From Guillardia theta CCMP2712 (taxonomy: Eukaryota; Protista; Cryptophyta), in contig NW_005434663.1 of assembly GCF_000315625.1 (NCBI RefSeq), forward strand, positions 124,001 to 188,000: a stretch of DNA of 64,000 nucleotides, given 5' to 3'. The position numbers and the translations under genes were made by a program. Below, one piece after another: positions 1-32,454 of the stretch (its first letter is position 1; each line of letters begins with the position of its first letter). The notes beneath the pieces were generated by a model, which was not told the origin of the DNA, did not search any database, and worked only from the letters and a program-made list of their open reading frames with translations.

Positions 1-831
<831 letters not shown>

Positions 832-21300: not shown

Positions 21301-22688
21301 ACTGGGAGGGAACGACCTTCCTGTCGGCAGGCGTCTACTCTGCCAACCGCCTCCTGCAATCAATGTCTTGTCTCAGCCAAGGGCTCCAGTGTCCCAGCTC
21401 CTCATCTTACTCATGCGATGTCTGGTCGCTTCCGACGAGCTTGGACGTGGAACGTGCGTCTGCTAGGTGAGGTCGACCTCTCCTCCTCCTCCTCCCTCAC
21501 TCCTCCACAGGCTTCAAGTCACCCCGACCACTCGAACGCCCTTGGGGTTCACCCACACGTTCTTCTCCGGGAGCTTCACGTCAGACCTGCTGCTGCTGCA
21601 GTACGACATGTACCACCTTGTGTGAGTAGCCGCGCGCGATCAAACTCCGGCGATGACTCTTGTTGATAGCATGACAAACATGACCGAGAAGAACCAGACA
21701 AACTTCATGCAAGCTGTCAACAGCTCGAACCTTTGCGCGTATGCTAGGCCGATGTATCTGGTCGACACGAACATGTCGTATCAACTTGCGATGGAGCTAG
21801 TGCTGGACTTCACATTCGAGACTCTCAGGTTGCAATTGACCTGTTGTCATCTTGTACTCATCGCATGTTATGTTGTTTTGTACTCATCGCATATCATGTT
21901 ATGTTGTTGTAATTTTGCACTCATTGATGTGTCAGGTTCGACCGCCTCTATCTCATCTGCCGCGTCAACGTCTCTGGCTCCTCTCAGTTCAACCCCTTGG
22001 GCTTGCAACTTGCGGATCCCAACCGTCTGCTGGCCCTCCAGCTCGCCCTGGCTACCCTAGCCCAAGTGTCCCCCATCAACGTTGTCTTCGCCTCCTCCGC
22101 CAACTTCTCCAACGGCAGCACCTGCTCTGACAGCCTCTCCTGCCTCCTTCAGTTCTATGTCTTTGCCGAGCACGAGTGGCAGCAGCTCGACCTGCGGCTG
22201 TGGGTCTCCAAGTTCCAGGCTGCGGTGGAGAGTCAGCAGTTGACGCAGGAGACGCTCAAGGGGCATGTCAACGTGTCTCTCTCCCTCGCCGAGCCCTTCA
22301 GTTGGTCCCCCCGCCTCGTCCCCAGCCCTTCCTGTCCTCCCCCGCCGCAGGTGACCCCCGAGCACGTCCGCTCCTCTCCTTACCTCTTGCAACTTCAGTA
22401 TCGAGCAAGCCGGCGGTTGTCTTGGGCGCTAGGAGGAGGAATGCCGGTGGGAGCAGCAGCCTCAGGCTTCGCCACTGCAAGTTCTGCTTCCTGCACATCA
22501 AAGTAAAGGAGGAGGAGGAGGAGGAGCTACCGGGGCCTCTGACTTGCTTTATTAGGCGAGGAGCCCAGGACGGGCAAGCGATCTTGTACTCTCCTTCCTC
22601 CTCCTCGCTTGGGTTTCGGCTGGTGGGAGTGATGACGAGAAGAGGAGCAGGGAAGTTGACGGTAACAGGTGAGACTGTGATGGGATGA
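15382..22688 (+). CDS. Large secreted protein with tandem ~130-150 aa beta-rich repeats (multi-exon; 3' end approximate)
   Basis: Signal peptide (LALVFLLALLQLASSA). Consecutive ORFs 15382-17790, 17803-19452, 20287-21129 and later ones are linked by short introns. Recurring motif like VSFxPPxxGxxxxLxFxFxxxxxLxxGDxLxLxLPGF; many N-x-S/T sequons. Confidence 0.75.
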
Positions 22689-22860
22689 CGGCATACAAGT
22701 GATGGGATGCAGTGGATACAGTTGCCGCCACTCCAGGAGGAGCTGCGAGGATTCCTTGGTTCTCAGAGACAATGATAGCAGGAGCAGCTGCGCTCGTGAT
22801 GTTTCATATATATTTCTTGTAAATAGACAGACAAGCTCAAAGAATAAAGACACAAAGGTT

Positions 22861-25713
22861 CTATGTACACGCGGAGTCGTCGGGGAAGAGGGGCAGGCTC
22901 ATGAGCTTCTTGTAGGAGACCTGCTTCGAGCCAGGCACTCTGACAGCCTCCAACACGTCGATCTCAGCGATCTCCATCTCAATCTCCGGCACAAGACTTT
23001 CCTTCCCTCCCTCCACCACCAGACTGTCGAACAGCTCCGAGTTCAGTTCCCCCATCCTCCGCTCTCGCGTTCGATGTCTCCGTGTCTTTTGCATCCATGA
23101 CCGATGCCTCTTCGCACCTCTCCCACTCGTCATCGCCCTCGCCTCCTGCTTCGCCGAGTTCCTCGACTGTCCGTTACGATTCGTTTCCTCCAAGAGGCTC
23201 TGCAATGCAGTCGATCGCTGCGTGTCCTGAATCCACTTGCCGAAGGCCCTCAAGCTCCGCCGCTCGTTGGAGTTCAGGTTGCCCTTGGTCCGACTCTTCC
23301 CTAGGGTGATGTGAGCGCAGAAGGGCCGCGGGTCCACAAGACTCTTTGCTGCGCACGAGCGGCGGAGAGCATCGTGCAGCTCGACGAGCTGCGGCAGACT
23401 CTGATCGTCCAGGCCCAGCCAGATCACTCGGGGAATTCTTCCCCATCCGGACCCAGCCGCGTGCCAGAAACATCCGAGTTCACCTGTGGCGACCTTGAAA
23501 GGACTGATGTTTGCCGTCCGCACTGCCTCTTGTACAGACTGCAGAACCTCGTCCATGGACTCTCCAGGAACGTCAAACGTTTGAATCGTAATATGCATCG
23601 TATTCGGATCAATCCATCGCACCAGACTGTCGAGCAACTTTGAGTCAAGAGGAAATTCCCGTCGAATGGTGTCGAGCAGTTTTGTCAGCTGAACCTTGGA
23701 ATGCTCGGACAAGGATATTGTTGCGAATATTCTCTTCGTGGCAACCTGTGATTGAAGGAGTCATCAGCAAAGCTAACATAGCATGCACTTTCTTCTCACC
23801 TGCGTTTCATAGACAGCACCCACTTTTCGTTGAATCTCATACGCGCTGCTCTCGACTATCTCGTCGTCCTCTTGCACACTTTCTTCATTCTGACTCAGAT
23901 CTTCGAATGCTTCAGATTCCTCCTTCTCGTCTTCGTCGGGGACGTCAAACAGGCCCAAATTCTCCTCCATGAGACGTTTCCTCATCAACTTTGTGGGCTT
24001 TCCGATGGTAGGAGGAGCAAACACAGACCGAATATCCGTAATGCCCTTGGCTGGAGAAGTAGAAATGACATGATCTCCTTTACGGCAAACTCTTATCGTT
24101 GCCCGTGGGGGGTTGTCACCAGGAGGATCATAGATTTGTTCATCAAGTCCTTCCGAGGTGATGGAGTAGCAAACAATTCGAACAGAGTACCTGAAACAAC
24201 GGGTCACGATCACAACCATCGCAATCGTGCACGTACAGATGTGCAGAGGCCATGAAAAGGTCATCTCGAGCGGCCGGAACGTTCCACCATGCTTTCGAAA
24301 AGTATCGTTTGAACTCCTGTGCACTGAGTTTCCAGCCCGCTATTCCATTCAGTTTATCAATCTGCATCACATTCAGTTTGTGCACATTTCTTTCAAGAAG
24401 TTGACCTGTGATGACAACAAAGATAAGACATCCTGTCTTGCGCGCTTAGCAGCAAATGGATATTGCTTCCCGCTCCCCATAACCTGAATCATAAGATTAC
24501 GGTCAGATCTCGGCAAAGGCTTCTCTGCTCAATAATCACTGACCGTCTGTTCTCTAAAATCGTAGCCGCGAGGCCTAAGCCCAGCACATTGTAACCCTTT
24601 CATGAGCGACAGGAAGTAGCTGTCCTTGTGCGGAGGTACCTGTGTGTTTAGATTACACCTCCTTCTTGACCTCGAAGACAATGAGAACCGTCTCAGGGCG
24701 CAATCCGAGGTCGTTCAGTCTCAAAATCATCTCCCTCAAAGCCTCATTTTCTGGCTCATTCCACAGGTTTCCACTGATATCTGAGAATTGAATCCTTGCA
24801 TGCCGAAATTTTTGCTCCTTCATAGCATATGAGGAAGCATTCTCCCTTAAGTCGAAGTCCTTGACGTCATCTTCTGAGATTTCAGTGTCCTGGTCTGTGA
24901 ATTGTCTACCTTCAAAGTTATTGGGTGCTTTGTCATCGCTTTCCAAGCTCGATATTTTTCTTTCCAACACTAGGATTCTATCTTTGAGCATGAGCTTCCT
25001 CTTCTTGAGCGCAGATATTTGTGCGTATGAGTGCACAGCAGGCTGCATTAGCTCAGTAGAGAGCTTGTCCGATATCTGTAAAATGCAGCTCAGCGCAACA
25101 ACCAGAATTTCTCTCATGCAGCTCAAAAGAACATTTCAAGACTCACCTCGTTTATATCCCGATGTTCTGCCTTGAGCTTGTCCAGCTCCGTTTTCAGCCG
25201 CTTGATTTCAGACTGCACGGAATCCATTTCTTGCGGCCGATCATCAACTTGCGGAGTGTCTCCAAGAAAGGCCTCGGTAGATTGGGAGGGATTGTTGACC
25301 GTATGCTCTAGCTTGAAGCCTAATTTAGAGAAATTATAATACACAGCTGGTTTCAAGACATTTGCAGGAAAATCAGTATTCACATCTGCATGGGGTTTTC
25401 GCGAACTCCTGCTATGAGCGTCTGGCTGAAACAATGAAGGTTGCCTCTGAATCCTACTTCCTTCACCGACGTCCATTCTCAGGCTGGATGCATGGCAAAT
25501 CTTTCGGAAACGCGATGATGTGATCGATCCCGTCTTCCTGTGGAAGTTTACATGATAGAAAGAAGGAGAAAATGCCAAGTTTCGTCCCGAATCTGTACTT
25601 ATAGCGAAGGCAACATGCCTCCCATCGTCAAGCTGAAGGGTGTTGCTGCATGTCTTTCCAGGCCATACGGCCCCAAAATATAGAAGAAACAGAAAGAAGA
25701 CTCCTCGGTACAT
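22861..25713 (-). CDS. Signal peptide + coiled coil + OTU-like domain (Cys>Ser) + 2H phosphoesterase (LigT/ThpR-like) fusion protein
   Basis: Phase-compatible GT-AG introns (25076-25146, 24640-24688, 23746-23799 and others) join ORFs 25123-25713, 24653-25126, 23773-24324 and 22861-23712. The 2H domain starts RIFATISL and has both HxT motifs (HITI 23584-23595, HITL 23302-23313). Confidence 0.75.
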
Positions 25714-26429
25714 GAGTCCAATGCGTGTTTGAGAAATCGAGATGCTTCAGGATTGATTCATTCTACAGATATCTGTTGATCACCCAACTCGGAACTTCTG
25801 CAAAGAGCAACATAAGAAGGAATCAGGATAAAGCGATATCTGTGATGAATAGGTTCGAAGATCCTTGCATCCAAGAACCATGAATCTGTCTGCAGAATAT
25901 TTTCCGCCCCTAAACCATTCGCTTTCGTACACTTTCCCCTTGGTTCCCTCCCTGCGCTGCTCATCTCGTTCCGTTTTATCTTCCATTCTTTGCCTGCTTC
26001 CTCTCTATACTCATCCCGTCGTTTCATCTCTCCTAGTCCCGCTTCTCATTGCTTCTTTCCTCAGCTCGCTCATCCTCCTCCTCCAATGCCCTTGCCGCAC
26101 CATAGCCCTCCTTACCCTCGATTCATTCATCTTCTCTTTGACGCCTACCCTCCTTGCTACTCGTCTCAATTCTCTTCCCCTTCTCCATTTCCCCATTTCA
26201 TGTGGTACTTTCCCTTTATCAACTTCAGCTCCTGCTTCTTCCCCCTGTAAGGCACCTTTTTCCGTCACTGTTGTCGCTTTCCTCCTCCTCCCATCTTCAA
26301 TCTCTAGCCTTTGCTTCATCTCGCTCCTGTTCCTCGCTCCTTCCTCTCTTTCCCTCTTCTGCTCCCTCACGTTCGTCGCCGTCGGCTACGTCTCCTCTGT
26401 ACTCCACTGCATTTCCTTGTCACTATCGC

Positions 26430-30452: not shown

Positions 30453-32065
30453 TTATTCATCACATTCCATCAACCCACTCATAGTAGTGTTGAGAGTCTC
30501 ATTCGCGATGTTCTGAAATCTCTTCAGCGATCTCAAGGCTTCCTTTCTCGTTACCTCAAGAGGCAGCCCTCGCATGAGGCATGAGAGGATTTCAATGCTC
30601 TCCACTTCATCTGTCTCATCTTGCCAACTTGTCAACTCAACAACATCCACAAGTTTCAAACTCACTCGCCCACTCCAGCGCTCTCCACCCTCGCGCACAC
30701 CTCTGGTTAGGGTCAGCCCCTAGCTGACACCTGTAGAAGGTCAAAAGGGTCCAGATACGCAGCCCACGTACAGCAGCAGGATGCAACGGCCTTGGCCCCT
30801 CATAGCGCTGTACATCAAGGGCGTCAACCCCCCGCTCTTGGTCGCCGCGTTCACTTGAGCGCCTGCACATCTTCATCGTCCGCTCGGACCTCCTCGAGCT
30901 CCACCTGCACTGACGAGGTCTTTGATCAGAGCCTCTCCTCCTTCGCGGGCTGCGAGGTGCAGCGGCGTGTTGCCCTGCAGCCAGTCAGCGTTCAGCTGGC
31001 CAAGTCTCTGCTTACCTCTACATCAACTTCGTCCACTGCAGCACCGGCAGCGAGGAGCGTGCGGCCGATCAAGCTCAAACCTGCGGCTGCACGCTAAAGG
31101 AGGATGATTGGCAGTGAGTCCAAGAACCTCGGAAGCTTGCTAGATGGAGCGGGGTGAGCAAATTACAATTCTTGACGTTCACATCAGCGCCGAGTTCGAT
31201 TAGAGCACACACTGAAGTCTGTGAGCTTGTCAAGGCAGACGAGCGAGATGCAACGCAAGGGTAGCAAGAGACGCACGTGCTCCTCGTAGAAACAAGCGGC
31301 AAGCAGCGGATTCTCCTCGCCCCTCACAGTAAACGCGTCGAGTTCGATTCCTTGTGCTGCCAGTCGTCTGATCTCACTGTCCTGCCCTTGTATGACTGCA
31401 GCCAACAGCCTGGCCGACAACATGACTAATGCACCCCTCTCTCCCTCCCTCCCTCCCTCCCTCCCTCTCTCCCTCCCTCCCTCCCTCCCTCTCTCCCCCC
31501 CTCCCTCTCTCCCTCCGTCCCTCCCTCGCTCCCTCGCTCCCTCATCCTTCTTACCCTTGCCTCTCCTCTGTTTGCTCGCCTTCGGGCTCATCTGACGAGA
31601 GGCTCTCCATTACTTTCTGCAATCTCCGTGAGGAAGTTGGAAGCTAAGACGTTGCCTCACCCATTCCGGGCATGCAGGCTGCAGATGGCCAAGCGTGTGA
31701 CACAAGGAGCATCTTAAAGAGCAGACGTGAGGGAAGGGGGGAACGATGGAAGCAGCAGTTATATCTTTACATCTTGACAAGCTTCACTTCATCAGGACCT
31801 TCAAGAAAGGGATAAAGCGGAATGGTGGGCGGCATTTCTCCCACCATCTCGTCTTCTTCCTGCAAGGCAAGAGTTTCAATGCAGACCATTCTGAGCGCAG
31901 CGGTCGAACCTGCCCTCCTCTCAGCTTCAGCCTGGCGCTTGAGAGGAGGAAGAAGCATGGGAGAGGACGGAGATCTGGTCTCGAACTTGATCGAGATCCG
32001 AGAAGAACGGAAAGAGCGACAAGGATAACAAGAAGAGCTTTCCTTGATATCGCACTGGTGCACAT
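30453..32065 (-). CDS. Signal peptide-RLKLRGG-CCHC zinc knuckle-ankyrin repeat protein (3' end approximate)
   Basis: Hand-spliced: MCTSAISRKALLVILVALSVLLG...RLKLRGGQ|EEDEM...KI|CSLCHTLGHLQPACPEW|KVMES...QG|LLAAVIQGQ... followed by ankyrin repeats (GADVNVKN...TPLHLAS, GNTPLHLAAREG, GLTPLMYSA). Junction phases are compatible. Confidence 0.72.
31438..31545. repeat. (CTCC)n microsatellite inside an intron of the ankyrin gene
   Basis: Directly visible tandem CTCC/CCCT repeats. Confidence 0.9.
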
Positions 32066-32454
32066 GCTTGCATTCTCTACGGATTCAACAAGAGACAAGC
32101 CCGAGGGTCGACTATGGCGACTGCAACTTGCCGTTTGTCGTCATAGCCATTCCTCCTCTTGTCCTCCTCTTGTCCTCCTCTTGTCCTCCCCTTCCCCTCC
32201 TCTTGCCATGGATCAATTTACCGGCCCGCCTCAGAGGCATCCTCAAAGACTTGTGGTCCGCGCATGTCTCTGGGAGGAGCGTCTCCGTGTGCCGCTTTAG
32301 AGGAGGCGGGAGGGAGGCAACAGAGTTGTATTGGTAGAAGTCTTCTTGCTTCCTCTACCTCCCTCAAGCTCCTCCCTCCTCTCCCTCTACCTCCCACAAG
32401 CTCCTCCCTCCTCTTCCCCTAACTTGGAGGCTCGCCGCTTCGATCCCGCGACTT

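What the first reader, a model, noticed from the sequence alone, without database searches (positions are those of the whole stretch)
22861..25713. Undescribed fusion: targeting peptide + Cys>Ser OTU-like domain + intact 2H phosphoesterase
Seen after splicing: LGLRPET|VPPHKDSYFLSL aligns with the OTU Cys box (VPGDGNCLFRAL) with Ser at the catalytic Cys position. MASAHLYSVRIVCYS and IRVCRKGDHVIST match the later OTU helix and His box (His at 24070-24072 retained). A phase-0 intron (23746-23799) joins this through an acidic linker to a LigT/ThpR-like domain with both HxT motifs. The N-terminus is a signal peptide followed by a Ser/Arg-rich stretch. Known: 2H enzymes act on 2',3'-cyclic phosphates, 2'-5' linkages or cyclic nucleotides, and complex red plastids use a ubiquitin-dependent SELMA import system. 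Inference: an organelle-targeted protein coupling a ubiquitin-binding pseudo-DUB (or a Ser-His variant) to RNA-end or cyclic-nucleotide processing. The ORF track hides it as four unrelated ORFs.
Basis: partly seen in the sequence, partly recalled or inferred. Interest (0 to 1): 0.8.

Follow-up and report, generated by a model that had tools for sequence, protein, structure and literature searches.

The report
Ubiquitin-protease look-alike fused to RNA-end enzyme
This is one real, expressed gene of the cryptophyte alga Guillardia theta whose protein joins an organelle-import leader, a strongly conserved deubiquitinase-shaped domain that has serine where the catalytic cysteine should be, and an intact RNA 2',3'-cyclic phosphodiesterase; no paper describes this combination, and it gives a testable candidate for the ubiquitin machinery around the cryptophyte plastid.

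Summary
Spliced transcript contigs show a single seven-exon minus-strand gene (25713..22861, 842 aa). From Met80 the protein is identical to GenBank GUITHDRAFT_102667, a "hypothetical protein" of Guillardia theta; that model omits the 79-residue leader.

- **C-terminal domain:** a complete ThpR/LigT-type 2H phosphoesterase. It scores above the TIGR02258 cut-off, has both HxT motifs, and its model matches the ThpR fold.
- **Middle domain:** invisible to the Pfam OTU model and to PDB sequence profiles, but the AlphaFold model matches only OTU deubiquitinases. The top 33 of 48,161 PDB representatives are OTU, Z 9.5 to 4.5, and unrelated folds score 3.4 or less.
- **Active site:** Ser325 sits where Otu2 has Cys178. 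His458 is kept. The third triad position is Ile.
- **Conservation:** the PPHKDS[FY]F motif is invariant wherever that stretch is present, and this domain is the best-conserved part of the protein.
- **Leader:** the hydrophobic start plus basic stretch recurs in relatives.

Localisation, ubiquitin binding and enzyme activity remain inferred. The scan had not reported this gene before. Unchecked scan notes on other pieces of this genome describe periplastid leaders ending in ubiquitin's tail (LRLRGG).

Verdict: a new variant of known kinds, of moderate to high interest.

The parts
22861..25713 (-). Whole coding region: 7 exons, 2529 nt, 842 aa plus stop. From Met80 it equals GUITHDRAFT_102667.
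   Evidence: Spliced contigs; frame and identity checks
25147..25713 (-). Exon 1 (aa 1-189): leader, variable N-region, start of the coiled coil
25477..25713 (-). Leader (aa 1-79): hydrophobic stretch GVFFLFLLYFGAV (mean Kyte-Doolittle 2.4), then 63 residues with 24% Ser+Thr, 9 Arg/Lys and 3 Asp/Glu, ending ..SSLR before Met80
   Evidence: the same layout in relatives
24689..25075 (-). Exon 2 (aa 190-318): DUF465/YdcH-like coiled coil (ALKKRKLMLKDRI), acidic spacer, first helix of the OTU-like domain
   Evidence: PF04325 above its cut-off in P0002 and P0161; 24.4 against 25 bits here
24544..24639 (-). Exon 3 (aa 319-350): Cys-box equivalent VPPHKDSYF
24619..24621 (-). Ser325 (AGC) at the position of the OTU nucleophile Cys, at the N-terminus of model helix 38-49
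24406..24483 (-).
   Evidence: joints 24481->24542 and 24361->24406
24237..24361 (-). Exon 5 (aa 377-418, last codon split): the FSKAWW..PAARDDLFMASAHL helix region
23800..24190 (-). Exon 6 (aa 418-548): OTU beta-sheet with the His box CRKGDHVIS, then the acidic linker (aa 467-548, 23800-24045)
24070..24072 (-). His458, the catalytic-His equivalent, at the start of model strand 171-177. Ile460 (24064-24066) sits where Otu2 has Asn302.
22861..23745 (-). Exon 7 (aa 549-842 plus stop): ThpR/LigT-type 2H phosphoesterase. HxT motifs at 23587-23595 and 23305-23313. A helical basic insertion of roughly 90-100 residues (about 22975-23280) lies between the second HxT strand and the last strands.
25714..25799 (-). 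5' untranslated region as far as the X2 contig reaches. It holds a 4-codon upstream ORF (ATG 25759-25761, stop 25747-25749) in the frame of the main ORF.
22742..22860 (-). Probable 3' untranslated region, overlapping the 3' end of a convergent plus-strand gene
   Evidence: raw-read depth by strand (low depth)

Best explanation
One nuclear gene of Guillardia theta encodes an 842-residue protein with five parts, in this order. (1) A signal-peptide-like hydrophobic start followed by a net-positive, Ser/Thr-rich stretch of about 60 residues, that is, a bipartite plastid-type leader. (2) A DUF465-like coiled coil. (3) An OTU-fold domain whose catalytic triad reads Ser/His/Ile instead of Cys/His/Asn-Asp. 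(4) An acidic linker. (5) A ThpR/LigT-type 2H phosphoesterase carrying a basic helical insertion.

Shown here: the gene model and its expression as one spliced message, both folds, the residue substitutions, and the conservation of the whole layout in relatives.

Inferred: the 2H domain is the working enzyme and opens 2',3'-cyclic phosphate ends of RNA (or a related cyclic or 2'-5' phosphodiester). The OTU-like domain no longer cuts isopeptide bonds but still recognises ubiquitin, a ubiquitin-like protein or a ubiquitin-tail-like peptide, and so brings or restricts the phosphodiesterase to ubiquitin-marked targets. The site of action is the complex plastid, most likely the periplastid compartment, which holds the nucleomorph, 80S ribosomes and the ubiquitin-dependent SELMA importer.
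For: - Gene model: spliced contigs from two runs carry all six introns with no mismatches, and a third run spans the last junction. The frame is continuous and equals GUITHDRAFT_102667 from Met80.
- 2H domain: PF13563 at E 1.5e-11. TIGR02258 'RNA 2',3'-cyclic phosphodiesterase' scores 67.6 bits against a cut-off of 65.7, and 76.3 in orthologue P0002. H, T, H, T are invariant in a 36-sequence alignment. The AlphaFold model has pLDDT 82, and its best PDB matches are ThpR/LigT (1vdx, 5h7e, 5ldm), TM by target 0.77-0.82.
- OTU fold: model pLDDT 76.8, pTM 0.75. All 50 top Foldseek hits are OTU enzymes. VIA-align gives DUBA Z 9.7 over 140 residues, OTUD1 9.5, OTUD3 9.4 and Otu2 9.2. In the exhaustive search, ranks 1-33 of 48,161 representatives are OTU and the next fold scores Z 3.4. 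ESM Atlas features and its own independent model also point to OTU, OTUD6B and otubain clusters.
- Residue mapping: model 8..179 aligns to Otu2 148..307. By simple offset, assuming no gaps, Ser38 (Ser325) falls on residue 178 and His171 (His458) on 299. Otu2's triad is Cys178/His300/Asn302, and the C178S mutant is inactive yet still sits on ubiquitinated 40S (PMC10175282).
- Constraint: PPHKDS[FY]F and C[RK]xxxHVIS are invariant wherever those stretches are present. Identity to three orthologues is 65-71% in the OTU-like domain against 45-51% in the 2H core.
- Leader: a hydrophobic start, then 61-93 net-positive residues, then a conserved M-D-x-G-[ED], in at least six lineages.
- Context: cryptophytes lack the SELMA deubiquitinase ptDUP and 'an alternative enzyme' has been postulated (PMC12412216). 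An OTU enzyme works at the apicoplast of Toxoplasma (PMC10795397).
Against: - No sequence or profile method links the middle domain to OTU. The assignment rests on predicted structures built from a shallow alignment of 11 sequences, and rmsd to real OTUs is 4-5 Å.
- I had no model coordinates, so the Ser-His distance and the ubiquitin-binding surfaces were not inspected.
- An invariant His-Lys-Asp-Ser motif in the most conserved part of the protein looks more like a working active site than a dead one.
- Nothing here shows ubiquitin binding.
- No signal-peptide predictor was available and the cleavage site is unclear. One relative (locus L002) has ..THSA|FS.., which could put an aromatic residue first and send it to the stroma, where there is no ubiquitin.
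- Met80 is conserved and is GenBank's start, so a leaderless cytosolic form cannot be excluded.
- Raw RNA reads cover only the 3' end, at low depth.
Confidence: 0.5

Rival explanations
1. The OTU-like domain is an active hydrolase with a Ser-His (or His-Lys-Asp-Ser) centre. It could be a ubiquitin esterase or deubiquitinase that stands in for the missing ptDUP of cryptophytes. It could also be the peptidase that trims periplastid leaders at ubiquitin-tail-like sites. In either case the 2H domain would be a second, independent activity.
For: H322-K323-D324-S325 and His458 are invariant, and this is the best-conserved domain. ptDUP is absent from cryptophytes. Ubiquitin esterase activity survives loss of the Cys in OTULINL and in Cys-to-Ala mutants (bioRxiv 10.64898/2026.10.20.760496). 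OTU-fold viral proteases that cut linear polyproteins appear among the structural matches (TYMV proteinase 4a5u Z 6.2, MRFV protease 7mia Z 5.0). Unchecked notes of this scan report about 160-200 G. theta leaders ending in LRLRGG.
Against: Cys-to-Ser is the standard way to kill an OTU enzyme (Otu2 C178S). The natural Ser variants Otu and CG3251 were inactive on ubiquitin chains, even after Cys was put back (PMC4654579). The third triad residue is Ile. No serine-type deubiquitinase is known. This protein's own leader ends LRMD, not LRGG.
Confidence: 0.2
2. The OTU-like domain has left ubiquitin biology altogether. It is a structural or RNA/protein-binding module that regulates or positions the phosphodiesterase, and the protein is simply an organellar RNA-end repair or processing enzyme, for example for tRNA splicing or snRNA ends in the nucleomorph compartment or the stroma.
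For: Two of the three catalytic positions are non-canonical. There is no sequence-level OTU signal. The only enzymatic signature that passes a curated threshold is ThpR. The basic helical insertion and the KRHR...RRHRTRERR stretch look like nucleic-acid-binding or nuclear-targeting elements. One relative may have a stromal-type cleavage site.
Against: The fold is kept over its whole length and His458 is invariant. Conservation of 65-71% is higher than in the catalytic 2H core, which suggests a very conserved partner such as ubiquitin.
Confidence: 0.2
3. The protein is not plastid-directed. The hydrophobic start is an ER signal or membrane anchor, or translation starts at Met80. It then works in the host cytoplasm or at the ER as an Otu2/OTUD6-like ribosome-associated factor that reads ubiquitinated ribosomes and heals cyclic-phosphate RNA ends left by quality-control nucleases.
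For: Otu2 and OTUD6B are among the best structural matches. Like Otu2, the protein has a helical N-terminal region ahead of the OTU domain. Met80 is conserved and is the annotated start. The pseudo-deubiquitinase OTULINL is reported to sit at the ER (from memory; only confirms its pseudo-DUB status).
Against: A net-positive stretch of 60-90 residues between the hydrophobic segment and the conserved M-D-x-G-E is typical of bipartite plastid leaders, not of secretory signals, and it recurs in at least six lineages. All named members come from plastid-bearing cryptophytes (Guillardia, Hanusia).
Confidence: 0.1
4. The fusion is an artefact: two neighbouring genes merged by contig assembly or read-through.
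For: The X1 and X2 contigs are chimeric with the convergent neighbour, so contigs alone do not prove single molecules.
Against: The intron between the halves is precisely spliced in three runs, in phase 0, with no stop codon. The same order of domains is found in intronless genomic ORFs of relatives (P0165 on a 59-kb contig) and in an independent transcriptome (P0002).
Confidence: 0.01

Closest known systems
OTU deubiquitinases of the OTUD1/OTUD3/OTUD5(DUBA)/Otu2-OTUD6 type
   Same: Same fold over the whole domain (Z 9.2-9.7, 133-144 residues aligned). There is an extra N-terminal helix as in OTUD1, OTUD3 and Otu2. The nucleophile position lies at a helix N-terminus and His at the start of the last strand. 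As in Otu2, a helical region lies upstream.
   Different: Ser instead of Cys and Ile instead of Asn/Asp. His-Lys-Asp precedes the Ser where canonical enzymes have Asp-Gly-Asn (from memory). Neither Pfam PF02338 nor PDB profiles match. It is fused to a 2H enzyme and carries an import leader.
Drosophila Otu and CG3251 (OTUD4 homologues), natural Cys-to-Ser OTU proteins (PMC4654579)
   Same: The catalytic Cys is replaced by Ser in a conserved OTU domain. Those proteins are inactive on ubiquitin chains, which suggests non-proteolytic roles.
   Different: A different OTU subfamily and lineage. The Ser change is sporadic there, whereas here it is invariant across the family. The partner domains are different.
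OTULINL/FAM105A, a pseudo-deubiquitinase
   Same: OTU fold (6drm Z 7.6) without the catalytic Cys. Weak ubiquitin esterase activity was recently reported.
   Different: Asp rather than Ser at the Cys site. It is an animal protein with no phosphodiesterase attached.
ThpR/LigT RNA 2',3'-cyclic phosphodiesterase (TIGR02258; PDB 1vdx, 5h7e, 5ldm)
   Same: Two HxT motifs, a score above the curated cut-off, and the same fold (TM by target about 0.8).
   Different: Bacterial and archaeal ThpR is a free-standing protein of about 180 residues. Here it is the C-terminal domain of a eukaryotic protein and has a helical, basic insertion of roughly 90-100 residues before the last strands.
Sts-1/Sts-2 (UBASH3A/B)
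   Same: The known case of a ubiquitin-binding domain (UBA) on the same chain as a 2H phosphoesterase domain (PMC10218301).
   Different: UBA, not OTU. They also carry SH3 and histidine-phosphatase domains. They are animal signalling proteins, unrelated in sequence.
ptDUP (SELMA deubiquitinase of diatoms and haptophytes) and TgOTU7 (apicoplast OTU)
   Same: Leader-bearing ubiquitin proteases of red complex plastids. TgOTU7 is an OTU.
   Different: Both keep a catalytic Cys. ptDUP is a USP-type enzyme related to yeast Ubp15 and is absent from cryptophytes. Neither has a 2H domain.

Membership tests
OTU deubiquitinase family (Pfam PF02338, peptidase clan CA) | OTU fold: helical lobe plus C-terminal beta-sheet | tested here: met
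   only OTU structures match. Ranks 1-33 of 48,161 score Z 9.5-4.5, and the next fold scores 3.4. Searches agree, using an independent model.
OTU deubiquitinase family (Pfam PF02338, peptidase clan CA) | Match to the family's sequence model | tested here: not met
   No PF02338 hit up to E=10 on the exons, on P0002 or on its middle region. No OTU chain was found by phmmer or by a family profile against the PDB.
OTU deubiquitinase family (Pfam PF02338, peptidase clan CA) | Catalytic Cys at the N-terminus of the central helix | tested here: not met
   Ser325 (AGC) is invariant wherever the motif is present. It maps onto Otu2 Cys178 by alignment ranges.
OTU deubiquitinase family (Pfam PF02338, peptidase clan CA) | Catalytic His on the last beta-hairpin | tested here: met
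   His458 is invariant and lies at the start of strand 171-177. It maps to within one residue of Otu2 His300.
OTU deubiquitinase family (Pfam PF02338, peptidase clan CA) | Acidic or amide third residue (Asp/Asn two residues after His, or Asp three residues before Cys) | tested here: not met
   His+2 is Ile460 and the position three before the nucleophile is His322. Mapped by register only, not by coordinates.
OTU deubiquitinase family (Pfam PF02338, peptidase clan CA) | Ubiquitin binding and isopeptidase activity | not testable with these tools
   Needs purified protein.
2H phosphoesterase, ThpR/LigT branch (TIGR02258, PF13563/PF02834) | Two H-x-T/S motifs | tested here: met
   H599-I-T601 and H693-I-T695. 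They are invariant columns in a 36-sequence alignment.
2H phosphoesterase, ThpR/LigT branch (TIGR02258, PF13563/PF02834) | Score above the curated family cut-offs | tested here: met
   TIGR02258 67.6 against 65.7 bits. PF13563 45 against 27 bits and PF02834 30.6 against 23.3 bits. AKAP7_NLS is below its cut-off.
2H phosphoesterase, ThpR/LigT branch (TIGR02258, PF13563/PF02834) | Complete two-lobed 2H fold | tested here: met
   Model pLDDT 82. The last strands are present after the insertion. The best matches are ThpR/LigT structures.
2H phosphoesterase, ThpR/LigT branch (TIGR02258, PF13563/PF02834) | Cyclic phosphodiesterase activity | not testable with these tools
   Needs an enzyme assay.
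Cryptophyte bipartite plastid/periplastid targeting leader | N-terminal signal peptide | tested here: inconclusive
   There is a 13-residue hydrophobic core after MYR (Kyte-Doolittle 2.4), and relatives have the same (2.2-3.0). No signal-peptide predictor was available.
Cryptophyte bipartite plastid/periplastid targeting leader | Transit-peptide-like stretch: net positive, hydroxylated, few acidic residues | tested here: met
   63 residues, 24% Ser+Thr, 9 basic against 3 acidic. The same pattern (61-93 residues) is seen in relatives.
Cryptophyte bipartite plastid/periplastid targeting leader | The first residue after signal cleavage decides the compartment: aromatic or Leu for stroma, otherwise periplastid (PMC4494062) | tested here: inconclusive
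   The cleavage site is not predictable here. The only site I could find by eye that fits the -3/-1 rule (..TCS|N..) gives a non-aromatic residue. Locus L002 may read ..HSA|F...
Cryptophyte bipartite plastid/periplastid targeting leader | Observed localisation | not testable with these tools
   Needs a GFP fusion or immunolocalisation.

The most novel reading that the evidence does not exclude
The Ser-type OTU domain is the missing ubiquitin-tail reader or cutter of the cryptophyte periplastid compartment. It would either replace ptDUP in SELMA import or recognise (or trim) the LRLRGG-type endings reported on periplastid leaders. It would be physically coupled to an RNA-end phosphodiesterase, linking ubiquitin-type marks to RNA repair in the relict endosymbiont cytoplasm. 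A bolder form of this reading is that the pair acts on ester-linked ubiquitin at RNA ends.
Probability: 0.12. Interest if true: 0.85.

Novelty: new variant of a known kind. Interest (0 to 1): 0.55.

Why it matters
Both folds are known. Three things are not: their combination, a whole OTU subfamily fixed on Ser/His/Ile, and its placement behind a plastid-type leader.

A 2025 phylogeny of the SELMA importer noted that cryptophytes lack the deubiquitinase ptDUP and proposed an unknown substitute (PMC12412216). This gene is a concrete candidate that can be cloned for that role, or for a ubiquitin receptor in the same compartment.

It is also a natural test of whether an OTU fold can work with a serine. 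That question is timely because ubiquitin esterase activity was recently found in enzymes lacking the cysteine. If instead the domain is only a binding module, the protein would be a second, independent case, after Sts/UBASH3, of ubiquitin recognition tied to a 2H phosphoesterase.

There is a practical gain too. The GenBank model should start 79 codons earlier, and the middle domain can now be annotated.

Tried and rejected
- **First gene model:** it joined 24540 to 24405 and skipped the 78-nt exon. The transcript joints refuted it.
- **Alternative donor:** a 19-nt intron with donor at 24658 (after ..KKE) also keeps the frame, but the contigs do not use it.
- **Sequence searches for OTU:** Pfam on single exons and on orthologue P0002 gave no OTU hit. 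phmmer and profile searches of the PDB gave nothing relevant.
- **Word-index search with the domain alignment:** it found only fragments of the same family, no bridge to canonical OTUs and no free-standing version.
- **P0008:** a 1859-aa hit with 17 stretches is a leucine-rich-repeat protein, so the match is spurious.
- **Literature searches:** OTU with 2H or LigT, and the locus tag, returned nothing on this architecture. 'SELMA + OTU' returned papers where OTU means operational taxonomic unit.
- **Taxonomic labels:** cluster members and contigs gave almost no organism names for the metagenomic relatives.
- **Limits of the tools:** the spliced protein was never typed into a tool. The identical database protein P0152 was used by reference instead. 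Model coordinates are not exposed, so I could not measure the Ser-His distance or model a ubiquitin complex.
Full report
**Gene model.** The region holds one minus-strand gene. The mechanical ORF list breaks it into pieces. Laying public runs on 22500-26100 showed spliced contigs in two runs (X1, X2), with no mismatches and six joints. After the tool's stated cut shifts, these are GT..AG introns on the minus strand at 25076-25146, 24640-24688, 24484-24543, 24362-24405, 24191-24236 and 23746-23799 (checked). A third run (X12) independently spans the last junction.

The exons are 25713-25147, 25075-24689, 24639-24544, 24483-24406, 24361-24237, 24190-23800 and 23745-22861. Together they make 2529 nt, or 842 codons plus a stop.

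ATG 25713 follows an in-frame stop at 25747-25749. The X2 contig runs to about 25799, so the message includes this ATG. The few raw RNA reads (X22) cover only the 3' ends of this gene and of a convergent plus-strand neighbour, on opposite strands.

**Identity.** A search of 1.84 billion representatives with the last exon, followed by a word-index search with orthologue P0002, found P0152. This is 'hypothetical protein GUITHDRAFT_102667 [Guillardia theta CCMP2712]', 763 aa. My transcript-based protein is identical to it from Met80 to the end. The window is therefore G. theta nuclear DNA. The fused protein is already in GenBank, but without its first 79 residues and with only the 2H domain recognised. 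I found no paper naming the locus or the architecture.

**2H domain (aa 549-842).**
- Pfam gives 2_5_RNA_ligase2 at E 1.5e-11 and LigT_PEase at 3.9e-7. AKAP7_NLS falls below its cut-off.
- NCBIfam TIGR02258, the ThpR-type 'RNA 2',3'-cyclic phosphodiesterase' equivalog, scores 67.6 bits against a cut-off of 65.7, and 76.3 in P0002.
- H599-I-T601 and H693-I-T695 fall in invariant columns of a 36-sequence alignment with bacterial ThpR proteins.
- The AlphaFold model (pLDDT 82) has a complete 2H fold. Its best PDB neighbours are Pyrococcus 1vdx, Deinococcus CPDase 5h7e and E. coli LigT 5ldm, with TM by target 0.77-0.82. AKAP18, plant CPDase, Usb1 and ASCC1 score lower.
- A helical, basic insertion of roughly 90-100 residues (pLDDT 52-65) lies between the second HxT strand and the last strands. 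It is partly conserved in relatives.

**OTU-like domain (about aa 296-466).** Sequence methods see nothing. There is no PF02338 hit up to E=10, no PDB hit by phmmer, none with a profile of 11 family members, and no bridge to canonical OTUs in the word-index search.

Structure methods agree with one another:
- The AlphaFold model of P0152:209-393 has pLDDT 76.8 and pTM 0.75, and four of the five models scored similarly (pLDDT 73.6-76.8).
- All 50 best Foldseek matches in the PDB are OTU enzymes.
- VIA-align gives DUBA Z 9.7 (140 aligned residues, rmsd 4.2), OTUD1 9.5, OTUD3 9.4 and yeast Otu2 9.2.
- The exhaustive alignment against 48,161 representatives, which does not depend on Foldseek, puts OTU-family chains at ranks 1-33 (Z 9.5 to 4.5). 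MINDY follows at 3.4 and unrelated folds score below 3.3.
- The ESM Atlas, with its own model and language-model features, also returns OTU, OTUD6B and otubain clusters.

*Register.* Ser325 is model residue 38, the first residue of helix 38-49. His458 is residue 171, the first residue of strand 171-177. The Otu2 alignment (model 8..179 to chain 148..307) places them, by simple offset assuming no gaps, at Otu2 residues 178 and 299. The published Otu2 triad is Cys178, His300, Asn302, and C178S is inactive but still binds ubiquitinated 40S (PMC10175282). The residue two after His is Ile460. So the fold and the His are kept, the nucleophile is Ser, and the third residue is lost. This mapping uses alignment ranges, not coordinates.

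**Conservation.** Relatives with the same order of domains include:
- P0002, from an MMETSP transcriptome (723 aa);
- P0153/P0162 (953-969 aa) and P0154/P0174 (986-1062 aa), from metagenomes, including intronless ORFs on contigs of 52-59 kb;
- P0161;
- a Hanusia phi fragment (P0001, 87% identical over the last-exon query);
- many other fragments.

PPHKDS[FY]F and C[RK]xxxHVIS are invariant wherever those stretches are present. Identity of the G. theta protein to three full-length relatives is 65-71% in the OTU-like domain, 45-51% in the 2H core, 42-44% in the coiled coil and 27-35% in the linker. The coiled coil matches DUF465/YdcH above the Pfam cut-off in P0002 and P0161, and just below it here.

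**Leader.** Residues 4-16 form a hydrophobic core. Residues 17-79 are 24% Ser+Thr, with 9 basic and 3 acidic residues. Relatives have the same plan: a hydrophobic start (Kyte-Doolittle 2.2-3.0), then 61-93 net-positive residues, then a conserved M-D-[VAG]-G-[ED] that aligns with Met80.

Two relatives that seemed to lack a leader turned out not to. P0159, a longer cluster member of P0002's cluster, runs with no stop for 18 residues upstream of P0002's Met, through ..GLRGLRMDGEE. The locus of P0161 has an in-frame upstream ORF starting MPTMDRVGRVVGLVVCCLLAPTHSAFS...

In cryptophytes, a signal peptide plus a transit-peptide-like stretch sends a protein to the plastid. An aromatic residue or Leu at the start of that stretch sends it on to the stroma, and otherwise it stays in the periplastid compartment (PMC4494062). 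I could not run a cleavage predictor. The only site I could find by eye that fits the -3/-1 rule (..TCS|N..) gives a non-aromatic first residue, but this is weak, and L002 may differ. The conserved Met80 leaves room for a second, leaderless isoform.

**Context from papers.**
- ptDUP, the SELMA deubiquitinase, is present in haptophytes, stramenopiles and Vitrella but not in cryptophytes. The authors suggest an alternative enzyme. G. theta also has a nuclear, leader-bearing ubiquitin homologue (PMC12412216).
- Toxoplasma has an apicoplast OTU enzyme with a normal triad (PMC10795397).
- Natural Cys-to-Ser OTUs exist in OTUD4 homologues of Drosophila and were inactive, even after Cys was restored (PMC4654579).
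- A 2026 preprint reports ubiquitin esterase activity in OTULINL, which lacks the Cys, and in OTUD6B.
- Sts/UBASH3 proteins combine a UBA domain with a 2H domain (PMC10218301).

**Earlier notes of this scan.** These are AI notes and remain unchecked. Several findings on other pieces of this genome say that about 160-200 periplastid leaders end in ubiquitin's tail LRLRGG and propose a ubiquitin-type protease as the leader peptidase. I verified only one such case, in this window: a minus-strand ORF at 31784-32098 with a hydrophobic start and ..ARLKLRGGQ... The leader of the present protein ends ..SSLRMD.., and relatives end ..GRLRMD..LRIRMD and ..LRGLRMD. This resembles LRLRGG with Met-Asp in place of Gly-Gly. 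I treat this as a lead only. It raises the value of testing this domain on such peptides.

**Mechanism.**
- *Shown:* one message, two folds, the substitutions, the conservation and the leader layout.
- *Inferred, most likely:* the 2H domain is the catalytic part and acts on 2',3'-cyclic phosphate RNA ends or a related substrate. The OTU-like domain is a non-isopeptidase recognition module for ubiquitin or a ubiquitin-like tail. The protein works in the complex plastid, probably the periplastid compartment.
- *Rivals:* an active Ser-His hydrolase (esterase, deubiquitinase or leader peptidase); a domain that has left ubiquitin biology; a non-plastid, Otu2-like ribosome-associated factor; and an assembly artefact, which is practically excluded.

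**Verdict.** The finding is a new variant of known kinds: a Ser-type OTU subfamily fused to ThpR behind a plastid-type leader. So far it is seen only in cryptophytes (Guillardia, Hanusia) and in unassigned environmental sequences.

Noticed in passing
window 25474-25713: The GenBank model GUITHDRAFT_102667 starts at Met80 (25474-25476). The transcript and the relatives support Met1 (25711-25713), which adds a 79-residue leader missing from the public protein.
   Followed up: yes
window 25747-25761: A four-codon upstream ORF (ATG AAT CAA TCC TGA) lies in the 5' untranslated region, in the same frame as the main ORF.
   Followed up: partly
window 22556-22862: A convergent plus-strand gene ends next to this gene's stop. 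It has a 44-nt GT..AG intron (22666-22709). Its 3' end overlaps this gene's 3' untranslated region, so the transcript contigs of X1 (10 kb) and X2 (6.3 kb) merge several genes.
   Followed up: partly
window 31784-32098 (minus strand): An ORF with a hydrophobic start followed by ..SSARLKLRGGQ.., a copy of a ubiquitin-tail-like LRGG ending. It matches the leader motif described in earlier notes of this scan.
   Followed up: partly
P0168 and P0169 (NCBI MGB1600320.1, MGB1601216.1): Two partial proteins filed in GenBank under a Promethearchaeia (Asgard) archaeon MAG sit in the 90%-identity cluster of the eukaryotic orthologue P0154. P0168 carries PPHKDSFF and the HVIS box. They come from contigs of about 1.4 kb, so this is most likely eukaryotic contamination of the MAG.
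   Followed up: partly
L002 1-2790: The gene call for P0161 starts at an internal Met, but the frame is open upstream and encodes a leader. Near the 3' end the 2H domain continues in another frame (ORF 2507-2776), which points to a frameshift or an unspliced intron in that contig.
   Followed up: partly
window 25310-25340 and the relatives: A short conserved motif Y-N-[WF]-S-x-x-G-[LF] (YYNFSKLGF here) lies between the leader and the coiled coil. Its meaning is unknown.
   Followed up: no
P0008: A 1859-aa leucine-rich-repeat protein scored E 7e-21 against the 2H exon through 17 short repeated stretches. This is a repeat-driven false positive of the representative search.
   Followed up: yes
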